A stretch of DNA of 60,832 nt from Octopus bimaculoides (lineage: Eukaryota), in NCBI RefSeq assembly GCF_001194135.2, contig NC_069007.1, positions 21,830,111 to 21,890,942 of the forward strand, in the 5' to 3' direction. Below, piece by piece: positions 52,882 to 52,945 of the stretch (position 1 is the first letter of the stretch; every line of letters begins with the position of its first letter). The notes beneath the pieces were generated by a model. That model ran no database searches. It saw nothing but the letters and a program-made list of their open reading frames with translations, and was not told the origin of the DNA. Both the position numbers and the translations under genes were made by a program.

Positions 52882-52945
52882 TCTTACCAAATCAGTAATG
52901 TCCAATAAAAATTGATTGCTTACCTGAAAAAGATGAGAAAACAAT
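52882..52945 (-). promoter_or_regulatory. Candidate recursive splice site (ratchet point) with 36-nt RS-exon
   Basis: Minus strand reads ttgttttctcatctttttCAG|GTAAGC, followed 36 nt later by a second donor ttg|gtaaga. Confidence 0.5.

What the first reader, a model, noticed from the sequence alone, without database searches (positions are those of the whole stretch)
52882..52945. Textbook recursive splice site with a frame-preserving RS-exon in the far 5' intron
Seen: on the gene's strand a strong polypyrimidine tract and CAG are followed with zero spacing by a consensus donor (ttttctcatctttttCAG|GTAAGC, junction 52924/52923). A second consensus donor (ttg|gtaaga) lies 36 nt later. The 36 nt read VSNQFLLDITDL with no stop in phase 0, the phase needed by exon 37992, whereas the other two frames contain stops. 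I saw no other AG|GTAAG with such a tract in the window. Established: this AG/GT ratchet point plus downstream alternative donor is the architecture of recursive splicing in long introns of Drosophila and vertebrate neural genes. Inference: the long 5' intron of this RBMS/shep gene is removed in steps, with optional inclusion of a 12-aa exon. I do not know of a description in molluscs, but cannot search.
Basis: partly seen in the sequence, partly recalled or inferred. Interest (0 to 1): 0.78.

Follow-up and report, generated by a model that had tools for sequence, protein, structure and literature searches.

The report
Alternative microexon built like a recursive-splice exon
The flagged motif is a real, already annotated, optional 12-amino-acid exon deep in a long intron of the octopus RBMS/shep gene. 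It begins with a consensus splice donor that is conserved in a second octopod family, so it is a good but still unproven candidate for recursive splicing outside flies and vertebrates.

Summary
On the minus strand, ttttctcatctttttCAG|GTAAGC sits at 52924/52923. A second donor, TTG|GTAAGA, follows 36 nt later, and only phase 0 is open (VSNQFLLDITDL).

The window is the Octopus bimaculoides RBMS gene. NCBI isoform X3 (XP_052833215.1) contains ...SPRGK|VSNQFLLDITDL|NYPKTS..., and isoform X4 is identical except that it lacks these 12 residues. Two O. vulgaris isoforms carry VSNQYLLDFTDL.

In Argonauta hians the same intron is 54 kb. It holds one orthologous island: TCATCTTTTTCAG|GTAAG is identical at 18 of 18 positions and TG|GTAAGAGTGA at 12 of 12. 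The exon body has diverged to 48 nt but is still open and in frame.

The upstream exon ends in AAG in Argonauta and in a squid. Ligation would therefore regenerate AAG|GTAAG, a stronger donor than the exon's own.

So the element is a genuine cassette microexon with full "expressed RS-exon" architecture, like Drosophila Ubx m1/m2 and the 36-nt RS-exon of fly shep. Whether the regenerated donor is used, meaning stepwise intron removal, could not be tested without RNA data; I put it at about 0.6. I class it as a new member of a known kind. No report of recursive splicing in molluscs was found in the searchable library.

The parts
52861..52955 (-). Conserved intronic island spanning the branch-point region, polypyrimidine tract, AG|GT junction, microexon and its donor.
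   Evidence: It is the only clear non-repeat collinear block between the 23 kb upstream of exon A and the 54-kb Argonauta intron (L001 42988-43093, 75% identity over 107 columns, E 5e-13 and 2e-11).
52951..52955 (-). Candidate branch point TTAAT, with the branch A at 52952, 28 nt before the 3' splice site. There is no AG between it and the acceptor.
   Evidence: Read. TTAAT is identical in Argonauta. This is a consensus-based inference, not mapped.
52924..52944 (-). Polypyrimidine tract plus CAG acceptor (ttgttttctcatctttttcag).
   Evidence: 17/20 pyrimidines. TCATCTTTTTCAG is identical in Argonauta. Its use as an acceptor is implied by isoforms that join ...SPRGK to VSNQ....
52918..52925 (-). 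Ratchet-type junction AG|GTAAGC. The first six exon bases form a consensus 5' splice site (codons Val-Ser).
   Evidence: AG|GTAAG is conserved in Argonauta as AG|GTAAGA, which changes Ser to Arg but keeps the donor core. The O. vulgaris protein also starts with VS.
52888..52923 (-). 36-nt frame-preserving alternative microexon (candidate RS-exon) encoding VSNQFLLDITDL.
   Evidence: Present in XP_052833215.1 and absent from the otherwise identical XP_052833216.1. tblastn maps it here. The O. vulgaris orthologue reads VSNQYLLDFTDL. The Argonauta orthologue is 48 nt, open and in frame.
52882..52887 (-). The microexon's own donor, TTG|GTAAGA.
   Evidence: TG|GTAAGAGTGA is identical at 12/12 positions in Argonauta. 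Its use is implied by the ...TDL|NYPKTS junction in annotated proteins. It scores lower than the regenerated donor.
37832..37992 (-). Downstream exon A ([16 protein letters not shown]...LLAMCE), in phase 0. It is the acceptor for both the inclusion and the skipping products and lies 14.9 kb downstream of the microexon.

Best explanation
The element is an alternatively included 36-nt coding microexon of the Octopus bimaculoides RBMS (shep orthologue) gene. It has the architecture of an expressed recursive-splicing exon (RS-exon).

Proposed mechanism. The strong acceptor (branch point, 17/20 pyrimidine tract, CAG) and the nearby donor TTG|GTAAGA define the microexon as soon as it is transcribed. 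That is about 15 kb before the next exon appears. Step 1 joins the upstream coding exon (...SPRGK, outside the window) to base 52923 and removes the first intron segment (>7.9 kb here, 40.8 kb in Argonauta). Because the microexon starts with GTAAGC and the upstream exon ends in AAG, the junction regenerates a strong donor, AAG|GTAAGC. In step 2 this donor competes with the weaker exon donor. Use of the regenerated donor removes the microexon together with the remaining 14.9 kb, giving the skipped isoform X4. Use of the exon donor keeps the 12 residues, giving isoform X3.

Shown: the exon is real, optional and frame-preserving; both splice signals and the juxtaposed AG|GTAAG are conserved across octopod families while the exon body is not.

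Inferred: the upstream exon of O. bimaculoides ends in AAG; the regenerated donor is actually used.
For: Sequence and uniqueness. The composite motif was absent from 300 simulations. Annotated use: X3 contains SPRGK|VSNQFLLDITDL|NYPKTS, and X4 equals X3 minus exactly these 12 residues. Two O. vulgaris isoforms include VSNQYLLDFTDL and four skip it. In that annotation, alternative forms come from PASA updates based on Iso-Seq and RNA-seq (PMC10700109). Long-intron context: the Argonauta intron is 54.2 kb, the O. vulgaris gene spans 136.6 kb, and the upstream exon lies beyond the window. Conservation pattern typical of ratchet points: 18/18 identity across TCATCTTTTTCAG|GTAAG and 12/12 across TG|GTAAGAGTGA. 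The exon body carries indels (36 versus 48 nt) and an unrelated peptide but stays open and in frame. It is the only clear conserved island in the intron, and the only pyrimidine-rich AG|GTRAG in the 86.6 kb of Argonauta locus examined. The upstream exon ends ...GCAAAG| in Argonauta and ...GGAAAG| in a squid transcript. The regenerated donor scores about 7.0 against 3.6-4.3 for the exon donor on a generic 5'ss matrix. That is the relation reported for RS-exons (PMC8605326). In Drosophila, seven expressed RS-exon reporters were verified by donor mutagenesis, and shep itself has an RS-exon.
Against: There is no RNA-level evidence here: no lariats, no RS intermediates, no saw-tooth coverage. The skipped mRNA is equally explained by direct exon skipping. 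Retention of GTAAG in Argonauta is only 5 nt next to an 18-nt identical stretch, so it is weak statistical evidence on its own. The last bases of the O. bimaculoides upstream exon were not seen; a Lys codon AAA would drop the regenerated donor to about 3.9, on a par with the exon donor. Decapodiform cephalopods use a different 33-nt microexon at this junction, starting with ATC rather than GT. No orthologue of the block was found in the 20 kb upstream of exon A in cuttlefish. The 5'ss matrix is a generic approximation recalled from memory, not a cephalopod model.
Confidence: 0.6

Rival explanations
1. Ordinary cassette microexon. The exon is included or skipped by conventional alternative splicing, with skipping by direct pairing of the upstream exon donor with the exon A acceptor. 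The GTAAG start is incidental (Val-Ser/Arg codons) and is rarely or never used as a donor.
For: Annotated inclusion and skipping isoforms are all that has been observed. Different, non-GT microexons occupy the same junction in squid, Mytilus and Crassostrea, so this junction tolerates ordinary microexons. The exon is in frame and open in three octopods, as expected of a coding cassette exon.
Against: On rough composition grounds (my estimate, not computed) fewer than about 1% of exons should begin with GTAAG. The peptide is poorly conserved (VSNQFLLDITDL, VSNQYLLDFTDL, VRNLCFLFGHDDDYDV) while the donor core at the exon start and both splice sites are retained. An exon with near-perfect acceptor and donor signals that is nonetheless often skipped is better explained by competition from a stronger regenerated donor. 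In flies such exons tested positive for recursive splicing.
Confidence: 0.33
2. Essentially a zero-nucleotide ratchet point. Its biological role is stepwise removal of the long intron, and the 12-aa insertion in some mRNAs is tolerated leakage without protein-level function.
For: The splice signals are far better conserved than the exon body, and the peptide and its length differ between Octopus and Argonauta. The fly shep RS-exon is included at only 2-7%.
Against: The exon is in frame and free of stops in all three octopods, whereas cryptic RS-exons at fly ratchet points are generally out of frame. Inclusion was frequent enough to enter two independent annotations.
Confidence: 0.2
3. Chance motif or annotation artefact with no splicing function.
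For: The bare YAG|GTAAG-plus-pyrimidine-tract motif is expected in about 8% of windows of this size.
Against: The exon appears in NCBI and in transcript-based O. vulgaris models. It is the only clear conserved island in the orthologous Argonauta intron. The site is not inside any repeat family detectable in the window.
Confidence: 0.02

Closest known systems
Drosophila Ubx microexons m1 and m2 (expressed RS-exons; Hatton et al. 1998, as summarised in PMC8605326)
   Same: Short, frame-preserving coding microexons inside a very long intron. They begin with a donor that is regenerated on ligation, and skipping versus inclusion is decided by which of the two donors is used.
   Different: Ubx m1/m2 are 51 nt and ultraconserved at every position, wobble bases included. 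The octopod exon body diverges in sequence and length (36 versus 48 nt). Recursive use is proven for Ubx and unproven here.
Drosophila shep RS-exon, chr3L:5193431-5193466 (Joseph & Lai 2021, Table S1)
   Same: It is in the orthologous gene family (shep = RBMS), is annotated as CDS, is 36 nt by the table's coordinate convention, has a ratchet-point donor (0.98) stronger than the exon donor (0.93), and is mostly skipped (PSI 0.02-0.07 in S2 cells).
   Different: Its position relative to the RRM1-encoding exon could not be determined here, so homology versus convergence is open. An aphid shep locus has no AG|GTRAG in the 10 kb upstream of the equivalent exon. The insect 'VGI...' linker insert is an alternative donor, not an RS-exon.
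Vertebrate RS-exons (Sibley et al. 2015; Blazquez et al. 2018, as summarised in PMC5126111 and PMC8605326)
   Same: YAG|GT site deep in a long intron of a neuronally relevant gene. A downstream donor defines a short RS-exon, and competition between the two donors acts as a binary switch.
   Different: The classic fully suppressed vertebrate RS-exons usually carry premature stop codons. This one is in frame and coding. The intron here is tens of kb rather than >100 kb.
Neuronal microexons (3-27 nt or slightly longer, SRRM4/eMIC-dependent programme; PMC8797185)
   Same: Very short, frame-preserving, alternatively included coding exon in an RNA-binding-protein gene.
   Different: No tissue data and no test of eMIC dependence were possible. 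The defining feature of interest here, a consensus donor at the exon's first base, is not a feature of that class.

Membership tests
Recursive splice site / RS-exon (Drosophila ratchet point with RS-exon; vertebrate RS-exon) | Juxtaposed acceptor and donor: pyrimidine tract-YAG|GTRAG with zero spacing. | tested here: met
   ttttctcatctttttCAG|GTAAGC at 52924/52923. Unique on the gene strand.
Recursive splice site / RS-exon (Drosophila ratchet point with RS-exon; vertebrate RS-exon) | Located inside a long intron. | tested here: met
   The site is 14.9 kb from exon A and >7.9 kb from the upstream exon, which lies outside the window. The orthologous Argonauta intron is 54.2 kb. The O. vulgaris gene spans 136.6 kb.
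Recursive splice site / RS-exon (Drosophila ratchet point with RS-exon; vertebrate RS-exon) | A short downstream exon with its own donor, allowing exon definition. | tested here: met
   36-nt exon ending TTG|GTAAGA. Use of this donor is shown by the ...TDL|NYPKTS junction in annotated proteins.
Recursive splice site / RS-exon (Drosophila ratchet point with RS-exon; vertebrate RS-exon) | Ligation to the upstream exon regenerates a functional 5' splice site. | tested here: inconclusive
   The upstream exon ends AAG in Argonauta and in a squid transcript, giving AAG|GTAAG. The O. bimaculoides upstream exon is outside the window, and only its final Lys codon (AAA or AAG) is known.
Recursive splice site / RS-exon (Drosophila ratchet point with RS-exon; vertebrate RS-exon) | The regenerated donor is generally stronger than the RS-exon donor. 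| tested here: met
   About 7.0 against 3.6 (Octopus, assuming AAG) and 7.0 against 4.3 (Argonauta) on a generic 5'ss matrix. The matrix is approximate.
Recursive splice site / RS-exon (Drosophila ratchet point with RS-exon; vertebrate RS-exon) | The acceptor|donor motif is conserved more strongly than the exon body. | tested here: met
   18/18 and 12/12 identity at the two splice-signal blocks. There are indels and an unrelated peptide in between.
Recursive splice site / RS-exon (Drosophila ratchet point with RS-exon; vertebrate RS-exon) | Direct evidence of two-step removal: lariats from the regenerated donor, RS junction intermediates, saw-tooth nascent-RNA coverage, or constitutive inclusion after donor mutation. 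| not testable with these tools
Zero-nucleotide ratchet point with cryptic, never-expressed RS-exon (typical Drosophila intronic RP) | The RS-exon is absent from mRNA and is usually out of frame or carries a stop. | tested here: not met
   The exon is present in annotated mRNAs of two Octopus species and is in frame and open. It is also open at 48 nt in Argonauta.
Alternative cassette microexon | A short exon flanked by functional splice sites, included in some mRNAs and skipped in others, preserving the frame. | tested here: met
   X3 versus X4 differ by exactly these 12 residues. O. vulgaris has isoforms with and without it.

The most novel reading that the evidence does not exclude
The octopod RS-exon is positionally homologous to the 36-nt expressed RS-exon of Drosophila shep. 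On this reading a recursively spliced microexon in the long 5' intron of the RBMS/shep gene dates back to the protostome ancestor and has been maintained for more than 500 million years. It would also be the first demonstrated recursive splicing in Lophotrochozoa.
Probability: 0.07. Interest if true: 0.8.

Novelty: new member of a known kind. Interest (0 to 1): 0.45.

Why it matters
Recursive splicing has been demonstrated in Drosophila and in vertebrates. The full-text searches run here found no report for cephalopods or other molluscs.

Cephalopods combine very long introns with large nervous systems and heavy post-transcriptional diversification. A concrete, conserved locus where the mechanism can be tested with existing total-RNA or Iso-Seq data is therefore useful.

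The locus lies in the orthologue of a gene, shep, that is recursively spliced in flies. That invites a direct test of whether RS-exons are ancient or recurrently evolved.

The practical limits are that the exon itself is already annotated, and that the mechanism, if confirmed, would extend a known principle rather than reveal a new one.

Tried and rejected
1. Short protein queries and a 192-aa query returned no cephalopod full-length proteins, apparently because hits are limited to about 1.75 times the query length. A 321-aa query solved this.

2. Retrieving orthologous DNA. O. bimaculoides X3 is not on record, because only the longest product of a gene is kept. The O. vulgaris gene is too long for DNA to be returned. 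Belonocnema and Trachymyrmex septentrionalis are not on record. The T. zeteki hit is an intronless retrocopy.

3. Cuttlefish locus L002. No orthologue of the RS block or of the decapodiform IYDDVHFLRSK microexon was found in the 20 kb upstream of exon A.

4. A metagenome pattern scan for the conserved acceptor/donor pair gave 0 hits.

5. Transposon origin. The window self-BLAST shows SINE copies at 52575-52748 and 53345-53590 but nothing covering 52749-53344. Rejected as far as the window allows.

6. ncRNA on either strand. Rfam gave only sub-threshold low-complexity hits at 54.3-54.5 kb, and there were no tRNAs.

7. A second 'conserved' block at 44330-44269 is about 45 nt next to a (TG)n repeat, so it is weak.

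8. I tested the idea that the fly shep 36-nt RS-exon equals the insect 'VGI...' linker insert. In Nesidiocoris that insert is contiguous with the RRM1 exon, so it is an alternative donor, and the idea is not supported.

9. An aphid shep locus has no AG|GTRAG anywhere in 20 kb.

10. Sibley 2015 and Duff 2015 are not held in the library.

Full report
**1. Observation**

- The sequence ...aaaacattgttttctcatctttttcag|gtaagc places the AG at 52925-52924 and the GT at 52923-52922.
- A second donor, ttg|gtaaga, begins at 52887, so the intervening exon is 52923..52888, 36 nt.
- It reads VSNQFLLDITDL in phase 0. Frame +1 opens with TAA and frame +2 ends in TGA.
- A scan of both strands found seven AGGTAAG heptamers (nine AG|GTRAG sites). 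Only this one has a strong pyrimidine tract. With a threshold of 13/20 pyrimidines it is the only AG|GTRAG on the gene strand of the whole window.
- In 300 first-order Markov simulations of the window, YAG|GTAAG with >=15/20 upstream pyrimidines occurred 0.087 times per sequence. The composite (plus an in-frame open exon and a second GTRAG donor within 15-120 nt) never occurred.
- The bare motif would therefore turn up by chance in roughly one window in twelve. The composite is rare.

**2. Gene context**

Six-frame translation and tblastn with molluscan orthologues place an RBMS/shep-type gene on the minus strand. Its exons in the window are:
- 37992..37832: exon [17 protein letters not shown]...LLAMCE, phase 0
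- 36630..36570
- 34649..34557
- 20704..20567: an alternative exon
- 15834..15613
- about 14791..14669
- 13747..13703
- 9261..9055
- 7937..7833
- 6461..6378

All translate with 100% identity to Octopus bimaculoides RBMS proteins. The window is therefore O. bimaculoides or something indistinguishable from it.

**3. The 36 nt are an annotated alternative exon**

A 321-aa query built from the window exons retrieved the cephalopod proteins.
- NCBI isoform X3 (XP_052833215.1, P0126) reads ...NKPDVIPSPTMSGSPRGK|VSNQFLLDITDL|[12 protein letters not shown]....
- Isoform X4 (XP_052833216.1) is X3 minus exactly these 12 residues.
- In O. vulgaris, two of six listed isoforms (CAI9741892.1, CAI9741891.1) carry VSNQYLLDFTDL at the same junction.
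- In that annotation, alternative forms were added by PASA from Iso-Seq and RNA-seq assemblies (PMC10700109). The exon is therefore transcript-supported in a second species.
- The upstream exon (...SPRGK) is not in the window, and there are no N runs above 52945. It must lie beyond 60832.
- The N-terminal exons of isoform X6 are also outside the window.
- This excludes the refuting scenario 'transcription starts downstream of 52.9 kb' for these isoforms.

**4. Conservation**

The Argonauta hians orthologue was retrievable with its introns (L001). Argonauta belongs to Argonautidae, a different family of incirrate octopods.
- Its upstream exon ends ...CCCCGGGCAAAG|GTAAAA at 2189 and exon A starts at 56421, so the intron is 54.2 kb.
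- BLASTN of the region around the finding hit one place in that intron, L001 42988-43093 (E 5e-13).
- The aligned blocks are TTAATA.A.C.TT.TTTT.TCATCTTTTTCAG|GTAAG and, further on, TG|GTAAGAGTGA. The acceptor/donor block is identical at 18 of 18 positions and the downstream donor block at 12 of 12.
- The exon body carries three indels. The Argonauta exon is 48 nt, still a multiple of three and open (VRNLCFLFGHDDDYDV).
- When the whole 23 kb upstream of exon A was compared with L001, the non-repeat collinear hits were this block, exon A itself, and a weak ~45-nt match beside a (TG)n repeat.
- The Argonauta site is also the only pyrimidine-rich AG|GTRAG in the 86.6 kb of that locus.
- Near-identical acceptor|donor motifs with poorly conserved exon content is the signature described for fly ratchet points (PMC8605326).
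- The window self-BLAST shows SINE copies on both sides (52575-52748, 53345-53590) but not over the site.
- Rfam and tRNA scans found nothing relevant on either strand.

**5. Would ligation regenerate a donor?**

- The upstream exon ends in AAG in Argonauta and in a squid transcript (...GGA AAG|; L003).
- In O. bimaculoides only the terminal Lys is known.
- With AAG the junction becomes AAG|GTAAGC. On a generic 5' splice-site matrix this scores about 7.0, against 3.6 for the microexon's own donor TTG|GTAAGA (Argonauta: 7.0 against 4.3).
- The matrix is an approximation recalled from general knowledge, so only the direction of the difference should be trusted.
- A stronger regenerated donor is the usual relation at RS-exons and predicts predominant skipping with some inclusion.
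- That fits the mix of annotated isoforms but does not prove the mechanism.

**6. Mechanism and what remains inferred**

The best-supported reading is an expressed RS-exon.
- The microexon is defined early during transcription of the long intron.
- It is spliced to the upstream exon.
- It is then either removed through the regenerated donor or kept through its own donor.

The exon's reality, its optional use, its frame preservation and the conservation of its architecture are shown. Use of the regenerated donor is inferred, because mRNA isoforms cannot distinguish it from direct skipping. I put this step at about 0.6. The main rival, an ordinary cassette microexon whose GTAAG start is incidental, gets about 0.33. 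A pure chance motif is effectively excluded.

**7. Limits of conservation**

- Decapodiform transcripts carry a different 33-nt microexon at the same junction: ATC TAT GAT GAT GTT CAT TTC CTG AGG TCT AAG, encoding IYDDVHFLRSK. It does not start with GT.
- Neither this exon nor the octopod block was found in the 20 kb upstream of exon A in the cuttlefish locus L002.
- Other molluscs have yet other inserts at this junction.
- The RS-type exon is therefore documented only within Octopoda.

**8. Comparison with known systems**

- The closest mechanistic analogues are the Ubx m1/m2 microexons and other expressed RS-exons of Drosophila. Many of these sit in RNA-binding-protein genes such as sm, heph, mub, msi and ps.
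- Drosophila shep, the orthologue of RBMS, is itself listed with an RS-exon reporter.
- In Table S1 of the same paper shep has an expressed CDS RS-exon at chr3L:5193431-5193466. By the table's coordinate convention that is 36 nt. It is included at 2-7% in S2 cells, with ratchet-point donor 0.98 against exon donor 0.93.
- Whether that fly exon lies in the homologous intron could not be established.
- The insect 'VGI...' insert between the RRMs turned out to be an alternative downstream donor in Nesidiocoris, not an RS-exon.
- An aphid shep locus has no AG|GTRAG within 10 kb upstream of the exon A equivalent.
- The equal 36-nt length is probably coincidental, since Argonauta has 48 nt.
- Full-text searches found no paper that treats recursive splicing in cephalopods or molluscs, or in RBMS genes; the few co-occurrences were incidental.

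**9. Verdict**

It is a real, conserved, optional 12-aa exon with complete RS-exon architecture, but stepwise splicing is untested.
- The exon is already in public annotation. The recursive-splicing reading is new but extends a known principle to a new phylum, so I class it as a new member of a known kind.
- Interest is moderate. The decisive tests are listed under next steps.

Noticed in passing
window 20567-20704 (-); L001 ~67950-68090: A 138-nt alternative cassette exon (VIRKREPRMREP...MTSFGG) lies between the two RRM-encoding exons and is conserved in Argonauta. It starts gacag|GTCATA, which is not donor-like, so it is not a second RS-exon candidate.
   Followed up: partly
window 44579-44617 (-): The first exon of the older O. 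bimaculoides model A0A0L8HI80 (MIEFRRTATQGAE) lies between the microexon and exon A. It would use a GC donor (GAG|GCAAGT). It may be an internal alternative promoter or an ab initio artefact.
   Followed up: no
window 6312-6461 (-): NCBI isoforms X3, X4 and X6 end in VCVTLHKFFCSLFLFNLFFQIF. This is read-through past the donor GAG|gtatgt at 6378. The last exon seen in O. vulgaris (DHNAPPVGND...PPPK) is not found in the window, so it lies in an N gap or beyond the window start.
   Followed up: partly
window 52575-52748, 53345-53590 and more than 15 other places: A SINE-like repeat with a tRNA B-box-like motif (gggttcagtccc) is scattered through the introns on both strands at 72-87% identity. ARAGORN calls no tRNA in the 50.5-55.5 kb stretch scanned. 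Two copies flank the microexon without covering it.
   Followed up: partly
L003 376-408 (squid transcript, ERR1712142): Decapodiform cephalopods insert a different 33-nt microexon (IYDDVHFLRSK) at exactly the same exon junction. Mytilus (VQIVGKEDQ) and Crassostrea also have inserts here, so this junction is a recurrent site of microexon gain.
   Followed up: partly
L004 3472-3612 (Nesidiocoris tenuis shep): The insect 'VGI...' insert after ...QAQMAK is contiguous with the RRM1 exon. The conserved Val-Gly-Ile is the canonical donor read through when a downstream alternative donor is used.
   Followed up: yes
L005 10001-10687 (Trachymyrmex zeteki): The 228-aa 'alan shepard' protein of this ant is encoded by a single uninterrupted ORF flanked by transposase-like genes. 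It is probably a processed retrocopy.
   Followed up: no
window 54331-54485 (-): Sub-threshold Rfam matches (mir-297, mir-1277, mir-3149, sno_ZL1) fall on a TG/TA-rich low-complexity tract. They are almost certainly spurious.
   Followed up: no
window 963-1954, 3473-4429, 9837-10549, 11340-11687, 26958-27723, 29538-29763, 35595-36201 and smaller runs: The window contains 4750 N in 11 runs, so it comes from a scaffold-level assembly. Intron lengths given in window coordinates are approximate.
   Followed up: no
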